In this document: positions 19,383 through 53,937 of the stretch, piece after piece
Layout of the letters: the number at the start of each line of letters is the position of its first letter
Numbering within the stretch: position 1 is the first letter of the stretch
DNA from: Zygnema circumcarinatum SAG 698-1b
Taxonomy: Eukaryota > Plantae > Zygnematophyceae
Assembly: GCA_037447605.1 (NCBI GenBank)
Contig: CM074805.1
Location: 3,505,361-3,569,360, forward strand
DNA length: 64,000 bases
Reading direction: 5' to 3'
Program-made: the position numbers and the translations under genes
Notes under the pieces: generated by a model
The model's database searches: none
What the model saw: the letters and a program-made list of their open reading frames with translations, nothing else
Told to the model about the DNA's origin: nothing

Positions 19383-19417
<35 letters not shown>

Positions 19418-19418
19418 C
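19383..19418 (+). repeat. (AGGC)9 microsatellite, equivalent to CCTG on the minus strand
   Basis: Nine perfect tetramer units. Confidence 0.95.
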
Positions 19419-19758
19419 GCTCAGCAGAAAGCCGGCGGCTGGTATTACAGCACTTCGTTCGTACATGTACGGCTTCGTCCGTACGTGCCATAATTACGGG
19501 TTTTTTAAACCAATTTAAGGGACAATCCCTTATTATCGTAAGCCGACATCCCGTATTTAAAGCGGCCTTGATAGGCAGGTCGGTACCGTACGGACGAACG
19601 GCAGCACGCAGGGACGCAGGGACGCAGGGACGCAGGGACGCACCCCGGTCCCCGGGCCGGGCAGCTGGAGACTTGCTTGCTCAGCTCAGCGGTTGCCTTA
19701 GTCAAGGGCAGCAAGAGGGAGACCACCCGGGCGAGGCCAGGCGCGGCGCGGGAGGCAG

Positions 19759-19947
19759 CGGAGCAGGGAGCAGGGAGCAGGGAGCAGGGAGCAGGGAGCA
19801 GGGAGCAGGGAGCAGGGAGCAGGGAGCAGGGAGCAGGGAGCAGGGAGCAGGGAGCAGGGAGCAGGAAGAAGGAAGAAGGAAGCAGGGAGCAGGGAGCAGG
19901 GAGCAGGAAGCAGGAAGAAGGAAGCAGGGAGCAGGGAGCAGGGAGGA
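19759..19947 (+). repeat. (GGGAGCA)n heptamer tandem array
   Basis: 14 perfect GGGAGCA units (19766-19863) followed by about 12 more units, some of them GGAAGAA/GGAAGCA variants. This array explains the spurious overlapping ORFs at 19367-20179. Confidence 0.95.
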
Positions 19948-20421: not shown

Positions 20422-23400
20422 ATGGACCTCAATATACCTTTCGAGGAAGTGCCGGCTGCATGCGACATCGGGAATGAGGTACAGGAGTGTCAGGAGCGGA
20501 CAGAACATGAGGAGGCGGTGACTGTGGAAGAAGGCGGGTTTGGCCATCAAGTGCAAGGTATAGTAGTTGCAGGAATCAAGCAAAGGCTTGGGACGACTTT
20601 AGGAACTGTCAGTTGGGGCAAACACTTTTCAAGACAGTCACCGGGGAGTGAGTGCGTTTTGTGAGATTATTCTTTGATCGAGTTCTTTTTTAAGTTGGCT
20701 GCAAACGAAGCCTTCTGTCTATGATTGCCATGATTATTTAAGTAGGAATTCATTTTATTGTTGAAAGCGTCGCTTACCCTGTTTCCAGTTTGTTGCATTC
20801 TGTCATGTAGATGTATGAATCGCTTAGATTGGTTTTTTGTTAATCCCTGAGTCTGTTAGAAGTATGTGTTAACGACCGCTGGAAGAAGGATTTGCCTAAA
20901 TTCAGGCCGTGTGATTAAATTTACAATTACTGTCTCTTTCACTTACAGACCAACCTGCACAAGTCGAGGTCCGCAGCACTTTCAGTTTCGATATTGAGAC
21001 GATTGAAGATCCAAATGATGAACATGCGACAGAAACTGGTGACATAGCTGATGCTCCAGAAGTTAGGGCTGAAGAGGACAGAGGATTTCGTTTTGAAGCT
21101 GAGGAAAGAGGAGAAGAGGAGGAGCTAGAGCATGGGGATGAGGGAATTGAGGGCTTGGAAGGGGTAGAAGGAGAGGATGGAGGCGATGCTGAAGAGGAAC
21201 ACCGTACTCAAATGCCTGTCAGTGAGAGGAGGAAGAAGAGGCGCCTAGAAGTGTTTGTTGGTGGATTAGACAAGGAAGCCACGGAGGATGATATTCGGGA
21301 GGTGTTTGAGACTGTAGGAGATGTAGCAGAGGTGCGGCTGATGAGAGATCCTGACACTGGTCGAAACAAAGGTTATGCTTTTGTGCGTTACACCACGACA
21401 GCTGCTGCTGCTAGAGCCGCGGTGGAACTGGAATTATCACAGGTGATAGATACTCTTTGAGTTTTGACTGACTATTGCTTAGTGAATGAGGTGGAGAAAT
21501 GGGTGGAGCAATGTCCCTCTCGCACTCACGATTTGGAAGTCACACCTGGAAGTCAATTTTGTTGTTGGTGTATAGTGTCATCTGGAGTGGACTCAACTTG
21601 TTCTAGATTTCAACCTCCCCCTCAACCAGTTCATATGAACTCCATTAATAACTCTGCATTTATACGCCCATTCCCTTTTTTTTAAAGTCTTTAGAAACGG
21701 TTGAATAGTCTTTTTTTATATCAGTTCACAGAGTTGCAGACTTTAGTTCAATCCCTTTGCTCAAGACTTGAGATCTGCTCTACATGGCCTACTGAAATGT
21801 CAAATTCTGGACGCGTTTTTTGGCGCAGGTTAGAGGGAAGAAAGTCGGTGTTTTGCCCAGTGAGGAGAATGACACACTTTTTGTGGGAAATATCAATAAA
21901 TCTTGGGCGAGAGAGGATGTGAGTTTCCCTTCTTTCGCACTTTTGGTTTTTGAGTGCGTTCAGTTTGGGAATTCCTCTTCACTTGTTTTCTATTACCCGG
22001 TAATTGCAATGACTCAATTCCCGGGGTTGCGTAGGGAGGGCGATTTGTAAAAGCTAGAAGCTAGCTTCAGTGTTAATGGCTTTGCTTGCAGACCTGTCTA
22101 CGCGGTCCTTTGAAACTAGAGTATGGATTCTGACGAAAGTCATGTGTCGACGCGCTTGGTGGCATTATACACTATTCCCAACCTCTCTTACCTCTTTTCC
22201 AGCTATCCCTCTTAGAAAATATAACATTCGTTTAGTTCAAGCCAACTTCTGATTTCACAGCTGTTAGGCTTTGTCGTTTATGTTTTGACAGGTATTGGAA
22301 ACGTTGAACAATTATGGGATTGTTGGTGTTGAAGAAGTGACGCTTATGGAGGACCCACAGCATGAGGGCATGAACCGTGGGTTCGCCTTTGTTGAATTTG
22401 GGGAGCATAAAGATGCGTTGAGTGCCTGGCGAAAACTTCAAACTCCTGAGGCCACCTTTGGACTAGATAGATCAGCAAAAGTTGCGTGGGCGCAACCATT
22501 GAATGAACCGGATGAAGAGACTATGGCGCAGGTACGTTACATATAGTTGGGAGATGCAAGGACTTGATAGGCTAGGTTCATGTTGTGTTGGAGCAGTGAT
22601 GTGTGAAGCTTAAACGATTGTCGATTCTCGGTAGTTAGTTCTAAGAGCTCCCCTTTGCTACTTCAAAGAACTAGTGGACAGTTATGATGGTATGTTTATG
22701 GAAGTAAAACTCAATTCTCCTGGGCAAGTGAATGGAACAGCTAAATCAGGTACTCTTCATCGATTTAGACTGCTCTATTGAGTTCACCAGTCATGCTAAC
22801 AGAGTCAAAGGAGGTCACTTTCTTCAGGTGAAGTCGTTGTTCGTAGATGGCATGCCTCCCATGTGGAGTGAGGACCAGGTAGCAGAACATTTCGGGAGAT
22901 TTGGTGAGATTGAAAGAATTGTACTCGCGAAAAATATGCAGTCAGCAAAACGAAAAGACTTTGGATTTGTGAATTTTAAATCTCGAGAATCTGCGCTCAC
23001 CGCAATTGAATCCTTGAACAACACCGAGGTTCTGGAGGATGGAACGAAGGTGTGGAAGCCTGAAGCCTCTATGCTGTGCTTGTGTTTAGAACCTCTATGC
23101 CTTTACAAATTTAATCTCGAAGTTCCATGGACGTTCCTGGCTGCAAGTTGTTTAAATTGCAACCATCCTGTATTGATGTAAACTCTTTCTAACTTGCAGT
23201 TTTAATTTTTTATGCTTGATTGAACGGCTGAAACTGCCACTTGTCGCTGTGCAGATTCGTATGAGGGTGACATTGGCCAAACCACAGACCAAAGCCCGTC
23301 CTGTGAAAGGTGGTGTGCGCGGTGGTTATCCTGTTAGGAGTGGACGAGGTGGTTACGAGTCTCGAGATACTTGGTCTGGTGAACGAGGAGGTAGATATGA

Positions 23401-26400
23401 GAGTCCTAGAGGAAGCAGAGGTACACCACGCAGTGAGCGTTATGAAAACCGTGACAGAGGGAAAGGTAGGCGAGATGCTGAGGATGAGAAGTCCAGTATA
23501 GATTCTCTATTGAGAGTTCTGCGCGAGCAAGCTGAAAAAGAGGAAAAGGCAGCTGGGACAGTTGCAAATGGTGCACCAAAAGAGATTGCAGCAGCTGCCC
23601 TACTGCCAGCTTTGTTGACACCAAAACCTGCTACAACAGCTCCACTCCCTTCAGTAGCTGAAACCTCAGCTTCTGTGGACGGAGAGGCAGAATTATCTAG
23701 TCAGCCCATTTCTGATACTGGCGAGCATGCAGCGGTCGAGGAACCACCTGTCAAATCTATTGGCGAGGCTGAACCTAGAGGAAAGGGTCCTGGAGAGAAG
23801 GTTCCAAGTGACAAATACGAGTGCAATATGTGTGGATTTGGTTCCGACATTGAGGAAGAGTACCATCGGCACCTATCGACCAGAGTTCATAAACTCATTG
23901 CAAACTTGAGGAAAGATGAGAAGCTTGCAAACAAGACCCCTCTAAGTATATTGCATGAGTTTGCCTCGAGAAATCGGGCGGAGGTAGGTCATCCACAGAC
24001 GAGTTTCTCATATCTCGTCTCTTGCGGTTTGTTGATATGTTTTGTGTTATGTCAATGGCGTTGCGTTACATATCCCATGGTTTTTATTGGTTGTTCCAGC
24101 CTTTGCGTAGGAGAAGCCGTGAATCTGCAGATGTTTTCTAGGTTAAGTAATTTCTTCTTGTGGTTCTACAGGTAACATATGAAACGCAGTCAGATAGTAA
24201 TCTTGGGCCATTTGAAATCACGGCAAGGATTTCCCGTGGAAGCAATGGTGTTCCCTCCGTTACCGGTGTTGGCAGAGGAAGGCAGAAAACTAAGGCTAAA
24301 CAAACGGCTGCAGCTGAAGCTTTGGAGGTCCTCATGAAGGACGTGCCAGAATCAGAGTTTACAAAGCCAGGGCAAGCGAGACTGAAGGCAATGGATCGAA
24401 GGGGTGGAGACAAAGGTGATGTAGGTCGAAGGGGTGAAAGAGGTCGTGACCGTGAGCGTGAGCGTGATTATGGAAGGAGGGCAGATGATAGACGGGGTGT
24501 ACGTTATGAACGTGAGGAAAAGAATTATGATAGAGATGCAAGGTCAGGGCATGGAAGCAGGTATGGAAGAGATGATGGTCCAAGGTATCCTGAGAACCGG
24601 TATGGACAAAAAGAGGAGACATATGCTGAAAGGCTTGAACGGATTCAGGGAAGAGGATATGCGATGAGACTCTTGGCAGCAGCAGCTCCACCAACACCTG
24701 CACCAACCATGATGTATCCTATGGATGAAAGGTTGCAAGTCGTTGGTGTCAAAAGGCCATATGTCATGACCTCATCTGGGGTATGTGTCCATTTCTTCAC
24801 CCTACATGCCTCTTTTAAACTATCTGATAACAGCATGTTGTTGTTGGCTTTCTCAGTACAATAGAACCCCTCCGAGTGAACCTCTTGTAAACGGAAATTA
24901 GCTTAGTGAAGTCTTTTCTAAGTTTCATCGATTGGGGTAGAAAATGAAACTGCGGCGTCCCTGGAATTGCAATTTTGCGCTACGGTTGTTCCATGTGGGC
25001 ACCGGTCCAATCGCACTTACAGAGGTTTTACTTTAGCATCTTTTGCTGGGAATTTGTTGATAGTTTTTGTCAGGAAGCATTTCTCTGCTGTCACTTGCGT
25101 TCTTGATGTTTTCACGAATTAGTGAAACGAGCATTCTGGTAAAAAGCACTTCGTTTTTCGTTCATTGGCGGTTTAATATTTCTTACTCTTTTTTTTTGTC
25201 GTCCTTTTTGGTCGCACTGCCCCTGCTTGTAGTTCGATTAGGTCATTGAAAAGGAAAGCGTCGTGGACTGAAACATCCCGCATAATGTTGCTGCAGGATC
25301 TTGGTACAGTCTATGTGGACTCGCGGGGAGTACATAGGGCTCGAATAGATGGGACTGATCCCAACCCTCCGATGGTCTTCGAGTCTAGGTAAAGCTTCAG
25401 CCTTATGAAGAAAATTTTGCTGTTGTATTGGTTTGGTCCTTGTTCACCTTTTAAGTATCCTTTTGAGATGCATTGGGTTTTTTATTCCACAGCGATCATG
25501 CGTTGAAATGACATGGTGCAAGTGGTGACTTGCTGGTTCTTCAGTTGGCTAATTTTGCTGGCCGCATGTGGGTCGACGTGTGATTGCAGAATGCCCTATG
25601 GGGCTTATCAGACAATTGTGACTATTCCTTCTGTATCTCCGGGTTCTTCAGCTCCAGTAGCAGGCACAAGTTTCACGGGTGGTCTCGCTGGTCCTGCTAA
25701 TGCAGTCTATCCCGGCAGTTACGGAGCAACATATGCCAACGCCCATGAATTTGTGAACCACCAATCAGCTGAGGTACATTGCGTTGGCTGCGTCTGATTT
25801 GGCCTTCACCAATATTCTTTCGCAACGCATTAGGCATTCTGTACACATTCAATTTTGTCACCGGCTCTCACCACTGCTCATTGCGCACGGAGCTATTTTG
25901 CATGAAGTGAAAGTCAAAGTCATTGAGCTTGGGTTGATCTAGAGCTTTTGTAACATAAAGCACAAAGAAAGTGCAAAATGCCCGTAGGCCGTAACACAAT
26001 CTTGGTTATGTTGCTCCGCGTTTTGGAGTACGAAAGCACGCATGCAGGAAGTAGAAGTGTTCTATCCGATGTTGGGCGGGTGTTTATCCTATCAGTGTTT
26101 TAAACGGCTGGACAGCTTATGGTTTAGTGAACAGATTGACAAGAACTTAATCATTGAATTTGAACTTGAACGTGACTAAAGCATGTAGATAAGTGCTGTG
26201 TATAGTTATTGTAATGTGGTTCTGGAGTAGTAGGTAGGCATTAGCGGGTCAAAGGTGTTCACTGTTTTCTCGCGCAATGTGCAGCAATTCAATGCATCTG
26301 GAGGGAATGGACAATTCCAACCTAATTCCTCTGCACCGTATAGTACGGTGATGGGGTCAGGGCAGCCTCCAACACATGGCCATACTACATTTGCTCAAGG

Positions 26401-30974: not shown

Positions 30975-31968
30975 TACTGCTAATACTGTACTACTGAACG
31001 CGCGCGCTGCGGGACGGAACGGGACTACGGGAGGCGCGCAGGCGGGCGGCCGGGCGGGCGCAGCGAGCGAGCGCGCGCTGCCGCGTGGCGGCCGCAGAGC
31101 GCGCCTCCCCGCCGTGCCGGCACGCTTCGCACGTGCGAGCTCCTCGCTCCCGGCAGCCCCGCGCCAATGGGAGGCCCGCGTCCCGCCACGCTGGCGGTCG
31201 CCGCAGCTCCGGCCAATGGCGGAGCGGGGGCAGGGCGGAGGGGAGGGAGGACCGCGCCTCCGGCCCGCCCTGCCCTGCCCCGCCCTGACACAGGCAGATG
31301 GGGCCATGAGGCCCAGGAGCATGATGACCCGCATGGAGGCCATGGCCCCATGGCATCGGCATGGGGACGAGTAGGGAGGGACCTCATGGCCATGGCAGCC
31401 GGGGAGCTAGGGGGTGGTTGCGGGGAGGCGGCTGAGGCGGGCTGCCATGCCATGATGCCATGCCAGGGCTTGCTGGAGGGAGGGGGGCGGTGGGTCGGTG
31501 AGGAAGGGATGGAAGAAGGAAGCTGGCATGCAGAGGATCGGGACTACTCTGCAGAGATGTAGGAGTTGCTGGAGTTACGATAGTGAAGGAGATGAAGTGG
31601 TTCGCGGAATTGAGTTAGGAGCTGCCGCTGGAGCTTGATTGGGTTGCAGTTTCGGCATCGTACTGTGTGGGAGTGATCCGTAGGAACGTTTCGGATAGGC
31701 ATTGACTAGTTTTTGGATGGTTCATCTCAGAGAGCTGAGAACACCGAGCTAGATTAGACAGATTCATGTTACGTTGAATAGCAAGAATTGGTAGTTGCTA
31801 GTCGATTTTTTCATGATCTGTCATTCTTGAAGTGTGCTTATGGACGGCTGGTGTCACTGCCAGCCGAACAACAGAGGACGAGCCTAGTGTCAGTTATTCA
31901 GTCACTTGGAAAAACTCCTTAGCAAAACCATTCTCCAATCAGCTTGCAGCTGAAGTCCGTACGAAAAA

Positions 31969-34900
31969 ATGGAGAGAGAAAAAAGACCTCCTCTGACAGT
32001 TGCTGTCTGCAAAGACTTCACTCGAGGAAGATGTACTCGCTCTGAGCTCGAATGCCGCTATGTTCATCCAACATCAACTATGAGCACCGAGACGACTGCC
32101 GACGGGTAAGGCAAGCATTTTGAATAGCAGAAGCCATGGATTGCATTGTCCACGACGCTCAGAGACGTGTTCATGCACCCTGCTAACTTGTAAATTGAGC
32201 TTGATTGTTGTGAGCACTGTGGTTCAACGATCAGTACGATCGAGCTGTGAAAATCGACCAGAATACTTTTTGTCAATTGTGTTGCCTGCTGGGCTGCATG
32301 CTGGAACTGCTTGCAGTGAAGTACATCGTTGTGGGACTCTTGCACTCCACTCTGAGAGCGTTGAAACGTTGTTGACAAGCTGAGCCGATCTTTCATGCAA
32401 GGAAATGGCACCCTTGACCGATTTCAAGGTCCATACGTGTACATGATTTTTTTTTTGTTTTTTGTTATGCATCAAGGTTTATATGAGACTTTTGGTCTTG
32501 TTCATTGCTACATTGTTCTTGCACTTGGGAAGTTTGGTGGAAATCACCAATGTTTTTCCCTTCGTACAAGTATCGGCAGCAAAGGAGAAAGTTAGGATAC
32601 GTATGACATGATATTTTGTGGCGGAAATCGTGCTATGTTGATGAGACGGTGGTATTTTCTTGTTTCTGAAGTATTTTTATATTCTCATGCGATCATCGTG
32701 TAGTAGTGAGGGCAGCAGCCAGCTCAAGCTTAGTTTTAAGTTGTTGTGATGACGTGCGAGTACTATCCATACTGACACAAGGAAGCTCCTTCTTGTAATC
32801 AGTGCCGTTGTGAAAGGACAGTTGTGATCAAGCTTGTGCAAAAAACTAGAGGTAGTTCTCCACGAGAAAGGTGGTGGTAGAGATAATGTCATCAGATTGC
32901 TGAATAGCCCTTGCAAATGTCTGTTGGATCGCAGAAATACGCAGGTTAAATTTCAGTGCCTGACACAGCCGAAGTTCTGAATGATGGTTGGTTGGTGTTG
33001 TTCTTTGCCGATGTCAGAATTAACAATCCTGTCCAGGTTCACAAATCACATCTTTGTTTCAGCTCCAGATCACATGCATGTCCGGGTCTGAATTAGAAAT
33101 GCGTTCATCATCATCATGTCCTTCTCTGGATCAGTTCTGGATGCTCACAAACATTGTGCAGTGCAAGAATGATTCTGTGATTTCTTATCCTCGTGCTAGG
33201 TCTGATATCAGAATGGCCTCGTGACAATTTCCTTTTCACCGACTGGCATTGTCAGTCGTTGGATTGCTTAGATGTTTGTGCTTTTGGCTATTTCGGTTGT
33301 TAAGAAGCTGTAGTCATTTGTTGAATTTCCTGAGTTTGAACACCTTTGCTGAGGATTGAGAGAAATTTTGTATGCAGAGATGTGGTCACTGTCTGCTTCG
33401 ATTCGTTGCGCAACCGCTGCACCCGAGGACCGACATGTCGATTTGTTCATCCTCCGCCTCAAATGCTACCGTGAGTCAAATTGTATTCTGTGTTTTAGCA
33501 CAGCAAGCCTGGGCTTTTCTGCATAACATGCTTTGTGGTCATCATCTGCTTCCTGTGTACTTTTGTGCAAAATTTCAACCAGTGTCTATCAGTCACTGCT
33601 AAAAAGTCAAGGTCAACAATGCAGCGGTCATCAGCTACAGTTTTTTTCTCGAGTACTTCATGATGCATATGCGCATACACTATCTGAAGTTGAGGAAGGT
33701 TTGCAATGCTCATGGTCTCTGTGAACTTTCCATCAACCTAAGACTTGGTTTGGCTTGCAATGCCTGACTTGCTTTTCATGTAAGGCGGTGTTTCCACCGG
33801 CAACATTTTTTCTGTGTTCACGTTATGACAAGTATTGAGCAGCATCTGCATCAATAGACTTTCCAGCCAGAGTTAGTGATGAGCAGTTTTTTTTGGTTGC
33901 TTTCGCCCTCCTCAAGTGAGGTGACGGAAGGGAGGGTGAAAATCTGTCGCTATCCTCTTGCTCCTGGAGATGCGTTCACTTGCTTAACTCAAGTTTTTCA
34001 AATTGATCGTTTCCTTCAAAACATGGCGGTACAGATGAAGCTTGCACTCTGAGTTCCACTTCAACTGACAAGAAAACTGGATGGGGTGTTCGCCCGCTTC
34101 TTTTGCAGAGGACTGCTCGAAAAAGCAGGCATTAGTGTGAGCCCGCCTTCGAAAAGTGATGTCAGAATGGTCGAATACTCTCCACCTCAACCCCAATTTC
34201 ACTCTCCATTTGTGGTGAGACTCGGAGATGAAACCTTCCAGTGTTTGGGAAGTCAATTGATTACCATCATTAAGTGAAAAGTAGCTGTCGTTGGTTTTGC
34301 ATACAATGCCGACCTGGAATTGCTTTTCGAGGCATTGCAGGGCATGCCTGGAGCATCGATTGGCCCGCCCCGAACTCCTCCAAGGGACCCACTTGGAATG
34401 CCTGTTCGGAACATATCTCGGCCTGCATTAGAGGTACACCACTCCAATGCTAGGCTTTACCAACAACTTGTGTATTTTGTTGTATTCTTCCTTACATTTC
34501 AAATGCCTCCTTTTTTGTGGGCAGGCCAATATTTAGAATGCAGCCATCGATAGCTTGCATTAGAGCAACTGTCTGTAGTGAATGTGTGATTTGCTTGCTT
34601 GCTTCCATCGGCCTGATAGAGTATGGGAAAGCAGCCTTACAAGCAAGATGTGAGGGGGATAACGTAGCTTGCACAGATTTTCTGAGTAATTGTTTTTTGT
34701 CAAAACCTCTAGTGCTTTCAAAAGGTCTAGTTTTTTCTTTTTGTGTTCGTTTGATGTTAGCCAACAGCATCCTACTGTGTTCTTTCGTTGCTTCCGGCTT
34801 ATTACTCAGGGAATGGCCTTTTGACCATCGAGGAAAAGCTGGAACGTGATGACTAAGTGCGCAGTACTTTGTTCTTGAGGTGGAACACACATGATATTCT

Positions 34901-37751
34901 TTCTCCGTTGTGTTGCCAATCTCAGCTCGCTGATTTCGTCTCAATTTCCACATCGCAGGTTTGCCGTGACTTTGTGAGAGGCCGTTGCTCCCGAGATGCC
35001 AGCGAATGTCGGTATGCACACACACAACCAACAGGTGGCGACACTTCATTGGTCACGGTATGTTATTTTATTTCCAATATTTCCCCCCCATCTCTTTGTT
35101 TCTTGCTAATTGTAGTTTCCCCCCCCCCATTCTGCCTCATTTGTTGTTGGATTTGCTTGCGTCAGGCTTAGGACGACACTCTTAGATTCTGGTTGATCGG
35201 CCACTTCCAGAATACGTAGCTTTTGACAGTAAATAAATAAGCATTGCTTCTGTTACAGTTACCACGCACTCTATACAGTCTGGCCAGTCTTATTCCACTG
35301 ACTAGTAAACAATTCTTGGAAGCAGGTTTGTCAAGATTTTTTGAAAGGCCGCTGTGAACGAGAAATGTGTCGGTACTTTCACCCCCCGGATCATTTAAAG
35401 TCTCGAATTAGAGAGGTGGGCACATTCTTTTCCCTTTATCACATCCCTTGCCACCTCCATTGATGGCTGCTCAATAGAGTTTCAGTATCGTGTCATAACT
35501 CTCAGATCAGTACTTCTGGCCTAATGTTATATCACGTAGCCCCTTCAGAATGCGAAAAGGTCTGGAAAAGCGATTCTCTGCTGTGCTGTGTCTCTCAGAA
35601 GGAAAGCCATATTAATTGAAAAAGACTCTAGAGTTTACCGTGCTGTAAGGATGCGAGGTGGAGAGTGTGCATGCTTGCTGTATGAATGTTCCTGTTCTGA
35701 CATGTTCTGGTTCATCCATCTCCCTCATTCGCAGAAACCGATGTTATTGGTCCGTGCGATTGGTGTTCTGGGTTTTTTGACCCTTCTGTTGGGGCTTGGA
35801 TGCACCATTCAGGTTCTGACAGGCAGCCATGTGCCCGGAACCCCTCCTTTAGTCCCATCAGGGTTGTTGTCGGGAGTCGGAAGTCCCGTCAGAGGGATGG
35901 GGTCTCCCCCAGCCACTTTGCTTCCAGAACGTGAGCGGATGAATGCAGCAGCCTACCAAGCTGCCTACAATGCCTACGCTGCAAGTTTATATGAGCAACA
36001 GGTCAGTAGAATGAGCGGCTGGTGCAAACGAGCAAAGCAATATTGAACTATTTTTGGGGGTGTTGGTTGTTCTGAGGCTGTGCCCCTTTAAGGTTGTAGT
36101 ACAAGGCTGTGGTTTTGTTACTTTCTACAAGGTATGGAAGGATATGAATATTGGAAGGCAATGCTACTTGTGGGCAGGTCGTAGGGAAAGTTGGGTTGTA
36201 AAGGCTTTGTATGCTTTGTCTGTGTTCCCACCTCGGCGTGCTTTTGAATAAACGGTATAACTGGTGACGAATCCGGTGTTGGTTATTCTGGAATTATTTT
36301 ATTGGGGGCACAGCCTGACTCTGTCTGGTATTTTATGCTGATTCAACCAAGTAGTGACTAAATTAGCAATAGCAGACACTGCTCGGAAGGTGTATTCCTC
36401 GTCGACTCATAATGCAGTGCCCTTGAAGGCTGAAACGAAGTCCTGCACCTTTGCCAAGACGTTCAATAATTTAAAACCTGCTTAACGATTTGTTGGAGAT
36501 GCTGCGCGTGCACTGCAGGCGGCGGCAAAACGGATCCGTTTGGAAGAAGAGCGAGCGGCTGCTGCTGGAAGTCTCCTCGGCTTCGATTTTGTTGTCGATC
36601 GCTTTCGGAAGACGCCGGATGTGGGTCTCGCAGCGTTTGGTGTAGGAAATGGTTTGGGAGCGTTGGGGAATGTTTATATGAGGGACCATTTATCGCCACA
36701 TCTTTCTTCTCCGGGTCTCAGCTCTCCACCTCCTGCAGGGAAAGCAGCTGGTACGGCCAGTCAACTAACAACTTCAATTCTTTGTGCCCACCCGACTAGA
36801 TAATTCACATCATCTGGGCATAGTGCTTTATGTACACTCTCCACTCTTGGTTAAGGCATTCTTCAGTGTGGCTTGGATGGAGGCTGCCTCGTATGCCAGG
36901 CATATTTATAAGAAGGTGTTTCCTCGTCTGAATGCGTTGTAAGTAGAAATTTGGAATTTTGATTGCTGTAAACCATAACCATCTTTGAGCTTCTTTGTGT
37001 TGCGGATTTTCTTTGGTATTCTGAAACATCTCATCCACACAAGTGACCAGATTTGAATGTAGGTTTGGCATTGATCAATATCCTATTTTGCAGCTGGCCT
37101 TTGTATCTCCTTTCAATAGTAACACCATGCAAAATGACCATTATGGACGACCTTGCTTCTTTCAATTGAACTCGTGCTGTCTCCTGGCCATCGTGATGGT
37201 TGTATGCCGTAATTGCAGACCTTCGCAAATGCTGTCTTTCTTATTGCGTGGTGCTTGCAACGGTGGGATGTAGATGCGGACAAGTTGTTGGTGTGCCGCG
37301 ACTTCCTCCGAGGAAAATGTGCTCGCATTCCATGCCGCTTCATCCACCCTCCGCCCCATGTGCTTGTGAGTGTAAGCCTGGCCCGTCGTTGTCCTTGTTC
37401 TCCTCGATCAGCCTCTGGGAATATTTTTGGTGACTCTTGTTTTATCTTCATTGACATAACAGCATGTCTCAGCAAAGAAAAAAGTGTATTCCTTTTGTCA
37501 GAGGGGTGAGGTGTCACGAGTGTCGATCTATTGAGGTATTGCAGTTACGTATTGAGTCTTTCTACCAGGAATTCGTTTTTTGGCTACACTTAAATAAAAA
37601 AATCTGCTGTCTTTCTGTGTATCTCATGTGGTTACAGGTGGCGGATAATCATGTGACAGTTTGTCGTGATGCTTTACATGGACGATGTGTGCGTGATCTT
37701 TGTCGCTTCTATCATCCTCCCAATCGGGCTTCGACTGGGCTTCCATTCTAA
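31969..37751 (+). CDS. Muscleblind-like (MBNL-type) CCCH RNA-binding protein with three tandem zinc-finger pairs, about 388 aa
   Basis: Ten phase-consistent GT-AG exons: 31969-32105, 33378-33470, 34109-34136, 34341-34433, 34959-35057, 35326-35415, 35813-36001, 36519-36750, 37274-37365, 37638-37751. In-frame TGA at 31951 upstream of the ATG. Finger pairs: [144 protein letters not shown]. Confidence 0.88.
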
Positions 37752-38529
37752 AAAGGTACTTCACTTCACATTTTAGCCCGAACAACTGTGAACTTTAAAA
37801 AAACTAACTGAGGTGAACATAGTAAATCTCCAAGGTCATGAGCAGATTCTGGAGATAATTTGAATTCAGGTAGACTGCTAAGCCCGCAATGAAGGTGTCC
37901 CTGCCAATGCATTCTTGGGACACCTGCTCTCAATGGTACTGAAGTGGTATTGCTTCTCAGAATTCCTCTCGAGGTGATCCTCTGAATCTTGAGCATATCC
38001 CTCCTTCGCCGCTTTTCCAATAATGCTCGTATAGAGAGGGTGATGAGCACCTTTTGCGCTCACCAGCCCCTCAGTATTGTCCTTCGTTGCATTGTTTGGA
38101 AGGACGGGTTTTTATCAATACTACTTCCTTCCAAACTCCCAAACTTACTAGGGCCTGACTTTCTGTTTGTGATACGATTGAGCCTCCGTGCAGCCTACCG
38201 GTGCCCAGGAAAGCATGAGACTGGCAGTGAGTCAGAGTCAATAAGAATTCTTAGCATGGCCCATTCCAGCGGTCTCAGAATTTCGTCTTGATGGATGACT
38301 TCTTTCAGAGAATTGTCGGCCTTCGACACTTCTTCCCATGCAGCGTCTGTGGGCATTAGAGCTCGAAAGCATTACTGCTGCAGCAGAGTACTATAGTGGA
38401 GATGTAGAGGAAGAGAGCAGCGCGTGCAAGCTCTGCAGAGTGTTCGCTGCTGGGGTCTGATGCGAGGATACCCTAGGGAGGCAGCCACAGCGCCGAAGAC
38501 ATTGTTCAGCAGACTGGTTGCAATGTTCA

Positions 38530-38690
38530 CGCCCCACAGGGCTGCTTCTGGCACAGGGACCGCGTTCACGCTTCTCCGCTGCTGCTCGCTGCTCGAGCTT
38601 AAAAGTATGCCTGCAAAGCAGTCCCTGCCAGCCTTCAAGTCGCCCCATTCTGCTGCCTTCTTGCTGTTGCTGCCTGCCAGGTGCTGCCAG
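38530..38690 (+). promoter_or_regulatory. YGCY-dense cluster in the probable 3' UTR of the MBNL-like gene
   Basis: I counted 19 TGCT/TGCC/CGCT/CGCC tetramers in about 160 nt, against roughly 2-3 expected at uniform base composition. Confidence 0.5.
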
Positions 38691-44865: not shown

Positions 44866-50478
<5,613 letters not shown>

Positions 50479-51315: not shown

Positions 51316-53937
51316 ATGGCTTCTTCTCCGAAGAAATCGCACTCCTCCCAATTCTTCTGCTGCTCTCCTCCCGCATACGCATGCACTGCAGCAAGTATTC
51401 CCATGCTATTTTTTCTCGTTGTTTTCAGTCTGTCTAACGATTCCCTTCGACGGACTGAAAGCTACGGGGAAGCCAGGTCCGTAGCATCATTCGAGGAAAA
51501 AGTCGACCATGAATCTCTCGTTCGGCCGCCTATGTTCCAAGATGTTTCCCACCTGATAGTTGACAACAGTCCTGACTTAAGATACGGCGTCTGTGCTCTA
51601 GATGCCGACTCGGATGGTCACATGGAATTTTTCGTGTGCGGATTTGGAAACCCTAACTTGGTCCTTAAATGGAAGAACGGCCGCCTTGAAAATATTGCCA
51701 TGGGTGAACGATTTCTGTTGGCAGACACTGGCAGACATGCGATAGGTAAGGTTCTTCCTTCTACACTTTCAACCTTGTCGTTAATAATCTGGCCAGCCTG
51801 GAGTTAAAGTATAGTATCTGAACCTTGTAACCAGGTTCGTCCTTATCTTCGTCATTCGCTTCAGCGGCTTCACTGACCCTGCAAGCACTGACCAGTGACT
51901 ACCCTACCACACACAATTCACAACATATATATGGAAACTAAGAAGATGCAGAACTTGCAGGAAAAAAATAGCAATTGTCTGTGTGTTACGCATTCGGAAT
52001 GAAAGTGTAAACACGAACCATGTAATGAGTTTAAAGGAGCAAGGCAGCTTTTCTAAGCTCCGCGGATGCTTAGATTAGTGCTCATATGATGCAAGCATGC
52101 TTTGCTATGCAGGAGTCGCTGCTGGAGACGCAGATGGAGATGGCATCGAAGAAATTTATGTCCTTAACACTGACACTTTCATGGGAAAAAAGAGATTTGG
52201 AGATCGCTTGTTTCACTTAGGAGTTGACAAGGCTGGACTAGAGTCATGGACGGATCTTTTCGATCTTCCGCAAAACATGTACAGTTCTTGCTCTCATACC
52301 ACTCTTTGTGTCAAGATGCTTGATTTCATGGCAGTCAAAATTTACGTCATGCCGTGGTACAGGAGGCTAAGGAGGGCTTCCTGCATCAATCTTCCTATTT
52401 TGCTGCTTGTGATGTTCAAAGTACTCGAATCATCCACTAGTTTCTTATCTTCAGAAACCCCTGTTTTTACGATCAGTCGAGTTGAAGTGAAACTGTTGAG
52501 CCCCAACGTTGTCCTCCCAGCTAGTAATGGCTTGCCAGCCTTTCACGTTCCTCAGACTTCTCAAGGAATAAGTAAATAGTTGAAGCCTGAACCTGCCGCA
52601 GTGATGCAGCCAACCAATGTGCGGGACGCTCTGTCTGCACTATTGATCGCCAGGGTTCCGGAAAGTACGGTTTTTTTGTCGCAAACTATGGCTGTCCCAT
52701 GAAGTTCTATGAGATCAGCTCTCCAAACGAATCCCGTGAAGAAGACTTTCGTATGGTGGATGTGGCGGAGGAGGCCGGAGTGGTTCGAGCTCCCACGGGA
52801 GGGCGGTCATGTCTCACAGGCCCTATCGTCTCAAGAACTGCAGGAGATATCTTTGTAGGAAATGAGAATGGCCCCAATTTCCTCTTCGTCAACCAGTGAG
52901 TATTCAGAGCAAGGCCACTATCACTCTTGCCAGCATTGAGTTTTGATAGTCTGAATCCAGAGTCAGGATGCCTTAAAATTTGGAAAACTTTTCCCTTGCT
53001 ATTACGGCGGGTTTCTCTGTAAGGTTCGGTTACTGGTCAGGCAGCAGAGATTTGAACAGAATGCGTGTACCAAGCTTGTGGGCTACTGTCATTGTCAAGT
53101 GTCGTTACTGACTGCTGTTTTCTGCTCTGCTTTTGCTTTAGGGGCAATGGTTTGTATGAGGAGAAAGCCGGCCGGTTCGGAGTTGAGGATAGGTATGAAC
53201 ATGCGAGGGGGGCAGCCCTGACTGATGTACGCGGCACTGCTCAACTTGGCCTTGCAATAGGCAACTGGGAGGGGCCGCACCGCCTGTTCGCAGCCGCTTC
53301 AGCGGACCTTCTTTCCGATAACGTAGGGGATGTGCAGGTTGCGTCGTTTGTGGCCAATGAAACCCTGGAACTCTCTGTGCCTTCAAGGATTAGGACCGTC
53401 ATCGCTGCCGATTTTGACAATGATGGCTTGGATGAGCTCTTCTACAACAATATAGGAGAACCAAATCGCTTGTTTTGCCAAGGCTTACCCGGCGAGTGGT
53501 CACCCTGCGACATAGGAGATGCTCTCGAGAGCGATGGTTATGGTACTGGAGCATCGATAGCAGATATTGACTCCGATGGGAGGTTAGAACTCCTCCTGTC
53601 CCATGGAGAGAGTGTGCCCCAACCCTTGTCCTTGTATAAGGGTCCACTGAATGGGAACTCATGGCTGCGGGTGCGTCCCCTTACAGCCATGGGCGCCCCA
53701 GCACGCGGAGCAGTGGTAGAGATATTTCGTGACGGGATTAGACGGCAGAGGAGAGTGATAGACGGAGGGAGCGGGTACTTGTGCTGCATGGAACCCGTTG
53801 CGCACTTTGGGCTGGGCCAGGCACAAGGCATAGAACATGTAGAGGTCTCGGTCACGTGGCCGGATGGCCAGACGGCGACCGTACGGAGTGCCATCAACCG
53901 AGAACTGACACTGCAGCACCCTTCAAAGAGTAATTAG
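51316..53937 (+). CDS. CRTAC1-like protein (FG-GAP/VCBS beta-propeller + ASPIC/UnbV domain)
   Basis: Exons 51316-51745, 52113-52278, 52602-52895, 53142-53937. Ca-binding DxDxDG repeats (DADSDG, DADGDG, DFDNDG, DIDSDG); AGRSVCTIDRQGSGKYGFFVANYG; RTVIAADFDNDG; GAPARGA..RVIDGGSGYLCCMEPVAHFGLG..VTWPDG. Confidence 0.88.

What the first reader, a model, noticed from the sequence alone, without database searches (positions are those of the whole stretch)
31969..37751. Muscleblind-like protein with six CCCH fingers (three tandem pairs) in a plant-lineage genome
Seen in sequence: a 10-exon, about 388-aa gene with finger spacings CX7CX6CX3H + CX7CX5CX3H, CX7CX6CX3H + CX7CX4CX3H, and CX7CX4CX3H twice. 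Linkers within pairs are 13-18 aa and end in VTVC; there is an LEVCRDF lead-in, HPPxHL exits, an Ala-rich linker and a KRIR basic motif. Established: the CX7CX6CX3H/CX7CX4CX3H pair, LEVCRE, CFDSL, DNTVTVC and HPPxHL are hallmarks of animal MBNL/muscleblind splicing regulators, which carry one or two pairs and are generally described as metazoan. Inference: this is a true MBNL-type regulator in a streptophyte with an unusual third pair, implying an ancient eukaryotic origin followed by losses, or gene transfer. It is intron-rich and flanked by typical plant genes, which argues against contamination. The first finger pair does not appear in the ORF track.
Basis: partly seen in the sequence, partly recalled or inferred. 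Interest (0 to 1): 0.9.

Follow-up and report, generated by a model that had tools for sequence, protein, structure and literature searches.

The report
Six-finger muscleblind gene in green plants
This alga carries a real, expressed counterpart of muscleblind, the RNA-binding splicing regulator behind myotonic dystrophy that papers describe as animal-only; its three finger pairs appear to be the ancestral form, kept in many plants and invertebrates and cut to two pairs in jawed vertebrates.

Summary
Real, spliced and expressed. RNA-like contigs from three studies confirm all nine coding introns; exon 3 is longer than first read, so the protein has 414 aa, not 388. All six fingers score better against animal MBNL than ZC3H10, and a 413-aa close relative folds like the MBNL1 tandem finger domain (Z 11.4). 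The gene is not an isolate. Six-finger orthologues run from Mesostigma through liverworts, ferns, Ginkgo, Magnolia and monocots (rice OsC3H28), roughly following the species tree; no eudicot was found. The third pair is not a plant oddity: corals, molluscs, insects, hemichordates, tunicates and lamprey have it, and plant and animal third pairs are reciprocal best matches (15/15, 17/17). All 58 jawed-vertebrate records have four fingers. Papers of 2016 and 2025 say plants lack MBNL; databases already auto-label some plant copies 'muscleblind'. A YGCY cluster behind the stop codon is conserved in a relative's 3' UTR, and exon 2 (finger 2) is skipped in one study, both suggesting self-regulation. 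RNA binding and splicing activity are inferred, not shown. The scan had noted that YGCY cluster; my look-up found no other MBNL note in this genome.

The parts
31460..31968 (+). 5' leader of exon 1 (approximate start; several upstream ATGs)
   Evidence: contig ends extrapolated from runs X7, X8, X14; ATG count
31969..32105 (+). coding exon 1, finger 1 (CX7CX6CX3H)
32106..32428 (+). alternative extension of exon 1 to a donor at 32428; stop codon directly after the normal donor, so unproductive (likely NMD)
   Evidence: joint in run X7, depth 24 vs 103; frame
33378..33470 (+). exon 2, finger 2 (CX7CX5CX3H); 93 nt, skipped in frame in run X8
34109..34214 (+). exon 3, Pro-rich linker (corrected 3' end)
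34341..34433 (+). exon 4, linker ending in ALE; the phase-0 intron after it (LE|VC) is shared with the coral, Selaginella and Klebsormidium genes
34959..35057 (+). exon 5, finger 3 (CX7CX6CX3H)
35326..35415 (+). exon 6, finger 4 (CX7CX4CX3H, HPPDHL exit)
35813..36001 (+). exon 7, linker and start of the Ala/Tyr-rich predicted helix
36519..36750 (+). exon 8, KRIR basic motif (aa 273; candidate nuclear localisation signal) and disordered linker
37274..37365 (+). exon 9, finger 5
37638..37755 (+). exon 10, finger 6, stop codon at 37749-37751, donor after 37755
38194..38309 (+). two alternative acceptors (38194, 38309) of the 3' UTR intron
   Evidence: loose contig ends mapped
38576..38690 (+). 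YGCY cluster (14 per 100 nt, densest on the + strand of the window). It contains a 27-nt element at 38578-38604 that is 26/27 identical to a relative's 3' UTR and forms a small hairpin with YGCY in its loop
   Evidence: that the mRNA reaches this far in this species is inferred from the relative's cDNA

Best explanation
The gene is the streptophyte orthologue of animal muscleblind/MBNL, inherited vertically from an early eukaryote whose gene already had three tandem zinc-finger (TZF) pairs. Streptophytes and many invertebrates kept all three; jawed vertebrates lost the third; eudicots probably lost the gene. Mechanism: each pair folds into the compact MBNL TZF domain (predicted). Each finger keeps the acidic +2 residue, the Arg two after Cys2, and the basic-aromatic pair after Cys3, the positions that read the GC step of YGCY in MBNL1 (sequence shown; role from my knowledge of the MBNL1-RNA structure). 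Three domains on long flexible linkers would bind clusters of YGCY with high avidity (inferred), and the KR motif would take the protein to the nucleus (inferred). There it would steer splice-site and 3'-end choice, and it would limit its own level through the YGCY cluster in its 3' UTR and through non-productive splicing of the finger-1/2 region (isoforms shown; causal link inferred). Step likelihoods: orthology ~0.93, ancestral third pair ~0.85, YGCY binding ~0.8, splicing regulation ~0.6, self-regulation through the UTR ~0.55.
For: Per-exon HMM scores favour MBNL over ZC3H10 by about 14-30 bits for all six fingers. The model of relative P0001 matches only MBNL1/2 structures at Foldseek E<=1e-4, with Z 8.7-11.4 against <=2.7 for other CCCH proteins. 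Pair-by-pair cross-scoring is colinear: pair 3 15/15 and 17/17; pair 1 11/15 and 17/17; pair 2 13/15 and 7/17. Independent triplication in plants is rejected (AU p=0.016), and third pairs fall on one side of a branch (91/83). The concatenated tree splits plants from animals 100/99 and is roughly species-like within plants. An LE|VC intron is shared with the coral gene. The KR motif aligns with the animal KR. The UTR YGCY cluster is conserved, poorly structured, and ranks 1 of 64 comparable motifs. Exon-2 skipping and a stop-containing donor are seen. Animal MBNL1 limits itself by dropping a finger exon and binds its own 3' UTR (PMC5786016).
Against: There are no binding or splicing data for any plant copy. 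The trees rest on only 66-198 columns. The MBNL versus ZC3H10 split has SH-aLRT 98 in one tree but 59/90 in another, and pairs 1 and 2 are not stably resolved. The shared intron sits at an AG|GT-type site where parallel gain is possible. Introns 1 and 2, around the skipped exon, show no YGCY excess. YGCY excess in other plant UTRs is modest: cluster test 1/200 in three, but count z only 0.5-2.2, and nothing in Klebsormidium. No named fungal, chlorophyte, red-algal or amoebozoan six-finger copy was found, so many losses must be assumed. The animal WLxLEV and NGR motifs of pair 1 are not conserved.
Confidence: 0.7

Rival explanations
1. Same orthology and YGCY binding, but in plants the protein acts mainly on mature mRNA (stability, localisation, polyadenylation) rather than on splicing.
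For: The only conserved YGCY cluster in its own gene lies in the 3' UTR, and the introns flanking the skipped exon have none. Only one KR motif is present, whereas the animal nuclear signal is a double KR (PMC10773944). Animal MBNL also has these roles.
Against: The single KRxR motif is kept from Closterium to Selaginella. Splicing activity is conserved in animal homologues as distant as Trichoplax (PMC5041496). The gene's own finger exon is alternatively spliced.
Confidence: 0.25
2. The six-finger gene arose in one lineage and crossed by gene transfer between stem animals and stem streptophytes, before Mesostigma split off.
For: Named full six-finger copies were found only in animals and streptophytes; no named fungal, chlorophyte or choanoflagellate copy appeared.
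Against: Plants and animals are reciprocally separate (100/99), neither nested in the other in an unrooted tree. MBNL-type pairs also occur in the euglenid Eutreptiella and in unidentified environmental transcripts. One intron is shared. The searched databases are unevenly named.
Confidence: 0.12
3. It is a ZC3H10-like or plant-specific CCCH protein that only resembles MBNL.
For: PF22628 also covers ZC3H10-type fingers, and support for the split from ZC3H10 is weak in one tree. Seed-plant copies are named 'zinc finger CCCH domain-containing protein 28'.
Against: All six fingers score higher on MBNL than on ZC3H10 profiles (the ZC3H10 profiles come from sharks and rays only). The three pairs are colinear with animal MBNL, the fold matches the MBNL TZF, and all listed Atlas neighbours are MBNL-type clusters.
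Confidence: 0.03
4. Animal contamination or an assembly artefact.
For: None beyond the literature's claim that plants lack the family.
Against: The stretch lies whole in one DNA contig, and runs labelled as the same organism from eight studies hold it or part of it. It is spliced in three studies. Its closest relatives are an algal cDNA and Closterium, and it shares most of its intron sites with Selaginella and Klebsormidium.
Confidence: 0.01

Closest known systems
Vertebrate MBNL1/2/3 (PDB 3d2n, 3d2q, 3d2s)
   Same: TZF pair fold, finger spacing, RNA-facing residue pattern, LEVC lead-in, VTVC linker end, HPPxHL exit, KR motif, alternative loss of a finger exon.
   Different: Three pairs instead of two; finger 2 is CX7CX5; Asp instead of Glu at +2 of fingers 1 and 3; no WL before finger 1 and no NGR motif; one KR motif rather than two; linkers unrelated.
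Invertebrate and lamprey muscleblind (coral XP_022791213, Ptychodera, Biomphalaria, Drosophila long isoforms, Lampetra)
   Same: Six fingers in three colinear pairs with KR between pairs 2 and 3; LE|VC intron in the coral gene.
   Different: Separate branch (100/99). The papers I read describe only one or two TZF motifs in animals (PMC3315501, PMC10773944), so their third pair appears undescribed.
Rice OsC3H28 (LOC_Os04g35800) and the plant 'zinc finger CCCH domain-containing protein 28' group
   Same: Same orthologous group: six fingers, three pairs.
   Different: Monocot copies have shortened linkers, a divergent pair 2 and an SR-like N-terminus, and lack the KR stretch between pairs 2 and 3. 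They are listed only in genome surveys, not linked to MBNL.
ZC3H10
   Same: CX7C-type fingers of the same Pfam family.
   Different: Different finger arrangement and linkers; lower scores for all six fingers; outside the MBNL group in both pair trees.

Membership tests
Muscleblind/MBNL family | Tandem CCCH pairs of type CX7CX6CX3H + CX7CX4CX3H with a short linker | tested here: met
   Pair 2 exact; pair 1 is 7-6/7-5 (animals vary 7-4 to 7-6 here); pair 3 is 7-4/7-4 as in animal third pairs
Muscleblind/MBNL family | Compact TZF fold like MBNL1 ZnF1/2 and ZnF3/4 | tested here: met
   AlphaFold model of relative P0001 (most residues identical in every exon): Z 11.4, rmsd 2.2 over 76 residues to 3d2n; the rows shown cover mainly pair 1
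Muscleblind/MBNL family | Conserved RNA-facing residues (acidic +2, Arg after Cys2, basic + aromatic after Cys3) | tested here: met
   All six fingers, same pattern as the animal fingers. Their role is from my own knowledge; the structure paper was not held
Muscleblind/MBNL family | Groups with animal MBNL rather than with other CCCH families | tested here: met
   HMM scores; trees; support for the ZC3H10 split varies (98; 59/90)
Muscleblind/MBNL family | Binds YGCY RNA | not testable with these tools
   Indirect only: conserved YGCY cluster behind its own stop codon
Muscleblind/MBNL family | Regulates alternative splicing | not testable with these tools
   Its own isoforms are seen but their cause is unknown
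Vertebrate-type MBNL1-3 in the narrow sense (not filed here) | Exactly two TZF pairs | tested here: not met
   Three pairs; the count is not family-defining, since coral, insect and lamprey MBNL also have three
Vertebrate-type MBNL1-3 in the narrow sense (not filed here) | WLxLEV and NGR motifs around finger 1; double KR nuclear signal | tested here: not met
   Alignment A2; NGR also varies among animals (NGK, DGK)
ZC3H10 | Fingers closest to ZC3H10, in the ZC3H10 arrangement | tested here: not met
   outgroup limited to cartilaginous-fish sequences

The most novel reading that the evidence does not exclude
MBNL is an ancient eukaryotic YGCY-reading splicing regulator whose ancestral form has three TZF domains and controls itself through its own 3' UTR. 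It still works this way in algae, mosses' relatives, ferns, gymnosperms and cereals such as rice and maize, was missed because eudicots such as Arabidopsis lost it, and carries a third RNA-binding domain that has also gone unnoticed in Drosophila and other invertebrates.
Probability: 0.5. Interest if true: 0.82.

Novelty: new variant of a known kind. Interest (0 to 1): 0.7.

Why it matters
It overturns two statements still made in the MBNL literature: that the family is absent from plants (PMC5041496, PMC11837677) and that it has one or two TZF motifs (PMC10773944, PMC3315501). It gives a probable function to an uncharacterised cereal gene (rice OsC3H28 and its maize orthologue) and to an apparently low-copy gene in Marchantia, where knock-outs are routine. 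That makes it directly testable what MBNL did before muscles and nerves existed. It also points to a third RNA-binding domain in fly, mollusc and lamprey muscleblind, which matters for invertebrate models of myotonic dystrophy. The surprise is tempered because automatic annotation already labels some plant copies 'muscleblind' and no function has been shown.

Tried and rejected
Short exon 3 (388 aa): rejected by RNA joints. Third pair as a plant-specific duplication: rejected. ZC3H10 and contamination: rejected. YGCY cluster as the antisense of a coding Ala/Gln run: rejected, since the homologous UTR differs by indels that are not multiples of three and tblastx shows no conserved frame. YGCY enrichment around the skipped exon: not found. 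Nine successful paper searches found no paper on plant MBNL; the library lacks most subscription journals, and two key structure/mutagenesis papers were not held. The stored EuPRI supplement text, which is truncated, showed no plant protein with these finger motifs. Unnamed four-finger MBNL-like transcripts (P0030, P0035, P0060, P0089 and kin) could not be assigned to a taxon. Genomic loci for Marchantia, Closterium, rice and lamprey were not retrievable. As the operators asked, no search used a joined model: searches were exon by exon, by an alignment of the finger exons, or with database protein P0001 as stand-in. Exons were translated in order only inside local scripts, to check frame and length.
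Full report
OBSERVATION. I laid three RNA-like runs from three studies and one DNA run on the locus. All nine coding introns appear as GT-AG joints in the RNA-like runs and none in the DNA run, which covers the stretch in one contig (that DNA run may be the source of the assembly). Exon 3 ends at 34214, so the protein is 414 aa. A further intron opens 4 nt after the stop and has two acceptors, 38194 and 38309. Two alternative events are seen, each in one run. Run X8 skips exon 2 (contig depth 35 against 40 for inclusion), which removes finger 2 in frame. Run X7 uses a donor at 32428, which leaves a stop directly after finger 1. Contig depth is only a rough guide to abundance.

HOST. Not given. 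The nearest proteins are an algal cDNA product (P0001, 413 aa) and Closterium. The scan counts 1177 windows of 64 kb, which fits the 71-Mb Zygnema circumcarinatum genome (PMC9915684). Zygnematophyceae is well supported; the species is a guess.

FAMILY. Each finger exon passes the PF22628 cut-off. The two exons searched in the PDB hit MBNL1/2 at E ~1e-9, far ahead of CPSF30 or RBM22. Against profiles built here, all six exons score about 14-30 bits higher on animal MBNL fingers than on ZC3H10 fingers. The AlphaFold model of P0001 has three confident finger domains, disordered linkers and one long helix carrying the KR motif. It matches only MBNL1/2 structures well (Z 8.7-11.4; next 2.7). The acidic +2 residue, the Arg after Cys2 and the basic-aromatic pair after Cys3 are kept in all six fingers and across 17 plant and 10 animal proteins; from my knowledge of the MBNL1-RNA complex these read the GC step.

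DISTRIBUTION. A profile of the gene's own fingers, and three homologue searches, found orthologues (mostly six-finger) in Mesostigma, Klebsormidium, Closterium, liverworts, Selaginella, Diphasiastrum, ferns, Ginkgo, Cryptomeria, Magnolia and many monocots, including the rice OsC3H28 group. No named eudicot or moss orthologue appeared, even with a Magnolia query whose 323 candidates were all scored. This suggests loss in eudicots but does not prove it. The concatenated three-pair tree separates plants from animals at 100/99 and roughly follows the plant species tree; Klebsormidium is a long, unplaced branch. Selaginella and Klebsormidium share most intron sites with this gene, and one phase-0 intron just before finger 3 (LE|VC) is also in the coral gene. 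MBNL-type pairs also occur in the euglenid Eutreptiella and in unassigned environmental transcripts; the euglenid has a green plastid, so it is not clean evidence of deep origin.

THE THIRD PAIR. Corals, a calcareous sponge, molluscs, arthropods including drosophilids and mosquitoes, hemichordates, tunicates and lamprey all have isoforms with three pairs. Plant third pairs score best on the animal third-pair profile in 15 of 15 cases, and the reverse holds in 17 of 17. Pair 1 gives 11/15 and 17/17; pair 2 gives 13/15 and 7/17, with near ties. Third pairs of both kingdoms fall on one side of a branch (91/83), and forcing all plant pairs together is rejected (AU p 0.016). All 58 jawed-vertebrate records have four fingers, and mammalian sequences stop or diverge just after the ANQ/GNQ motif that leads into pair 3 in lamprey. 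So three pairs are most simply ancestral, and the familiar two-pair form is a truncation. Pairs 1 and 2 are not stably resolved in the trees.

MECHANISM. Shown: architecture, predicted fold, residue pattern, isoforms. Inferred: multivalent binding of YGCY clusters, nuclear import through KRIR, and control of splicing and 3' ends. The best indirect evidence for specificity is the gene's own 3' end. The densest YGCY cluster on the + strand of the 64 kb (14 per 100 nt) starts at 38576. The relative's cDNA has an equally dense cluster in its 3' UTR, and the two share a 27-nt element with one difference, the only conserved non-coding block between them (alignment score 60.5 against a shuffled maximum of 40.5). 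The element is less structured than shuffles and shows a small hairpin whose loop is YGCY in both species. YGCY ranks 1 and 2 of 64 comparable motifs in these two UTRs and first in a seed-plant UTR. It is weak in Selaginella and one other plant and absent in Klebsormidium. That this species' mRNA reaches the cluster is inferred from the relative; my read lay-out ended at 37810. Animal MBNL1 limits itself by dropping a finger-coding exon and binds its own 3' UTR (PMC5786016), so a parallel is plausible. Against it, the introns around exon 2 show no YGCY excess.

WHAT IS KNOWN. Oddo et al. [quoted passage not shown] Verbeeren et al. 2023 and Irion 2012 describe one or two TZF motifs. Rice OsC3H28 is listed with six CCCH motifs but not linked to MBNL (PMC2267713). 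NCBI, however, names the Marchantia protein 'muscleblind' and a Selaginella isoform 'muscleblind-like protein 3', so the relationship is latent in databases. I found no paper that states it; my library lacks most subscription journals.

METHOD NOTE.

VERDICT. A genuine MBNL-family gene in a streptophyte alga, one member of a broad plant orthologous group. It is a three-pair variant that appears ancestral and undescribed. Orthology is strong and function is inferred. Novelty: new variant of a known kind. Interest 0.7.

Noticed in passing
window 38576-38690; L002 1824-1930: Conserved YGCY-rich 3' UTR element with a small hairpin presenting YGCY in its loop; candidate self-regulation site.
   Followed up: yes
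proteins P0019, P0198, P0238 (dipterans), P0184 (lamprey), P0008 (coral): Long muscleblind isoforms of flies, mosquitoes, lamprey and corals carry a third finger pair not mentioned in the papers read; some Drosophila isoforms combine pair 1 with pair 3.
   Followed up: partly
proteins P0005, P0006, P0015, P0333 (orchid, Iris, Asparagus): Monocot orthologues have expanded to 7-8 fingers by internal duplication; grasses have an SR-like N-terminus and lack the KR linker.
   Followed up: no
proteins P0030, P0035, P0060, P0089, P0230-P0246; L007: A family of ~260-aa four-finger MBNL-like proteins known only from environmental transcripts, with no taxon; may be a protist branch.
   Followed up: partly
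proteins P0065 (Eutreptiella), P0027, P0023, P0032; L008: Proteins with three or more MBNL-type pairs in a euglenid and in unassigned plankton transcripts.
   Followed up: partly
window 31460-31968: The long 5' leader holds about nine upstream ATGs; the relative's leaders hold 3-5. Possible translational control.
   Followed up: no
window 53065-53937 (+) and upstream exons from ~51316: Gene for an FG-GAP repeat plus ASPIC/UnbV protein (CRTAC1-like), a family mostly known from bacteria and animals (range from my own knowledge).
   Followed up: no
window 22732-24864 (+): RRM protein resembling hnRNP Q/R, with what looks by eye like a C2H2 finger and a dsRNA-binding-like segment; unusual mix.
   Followed up: no
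window ~45554-50478 (-): Squalene epoxidase gene (PF08491).
   Followed up: no
window ~19400-19900: Short tandem repeats (9-nt GGGAGCAGG-type and 4-nt units) that give the highest YGCY density on the minus strand; simple repeat.
   Followed up: no
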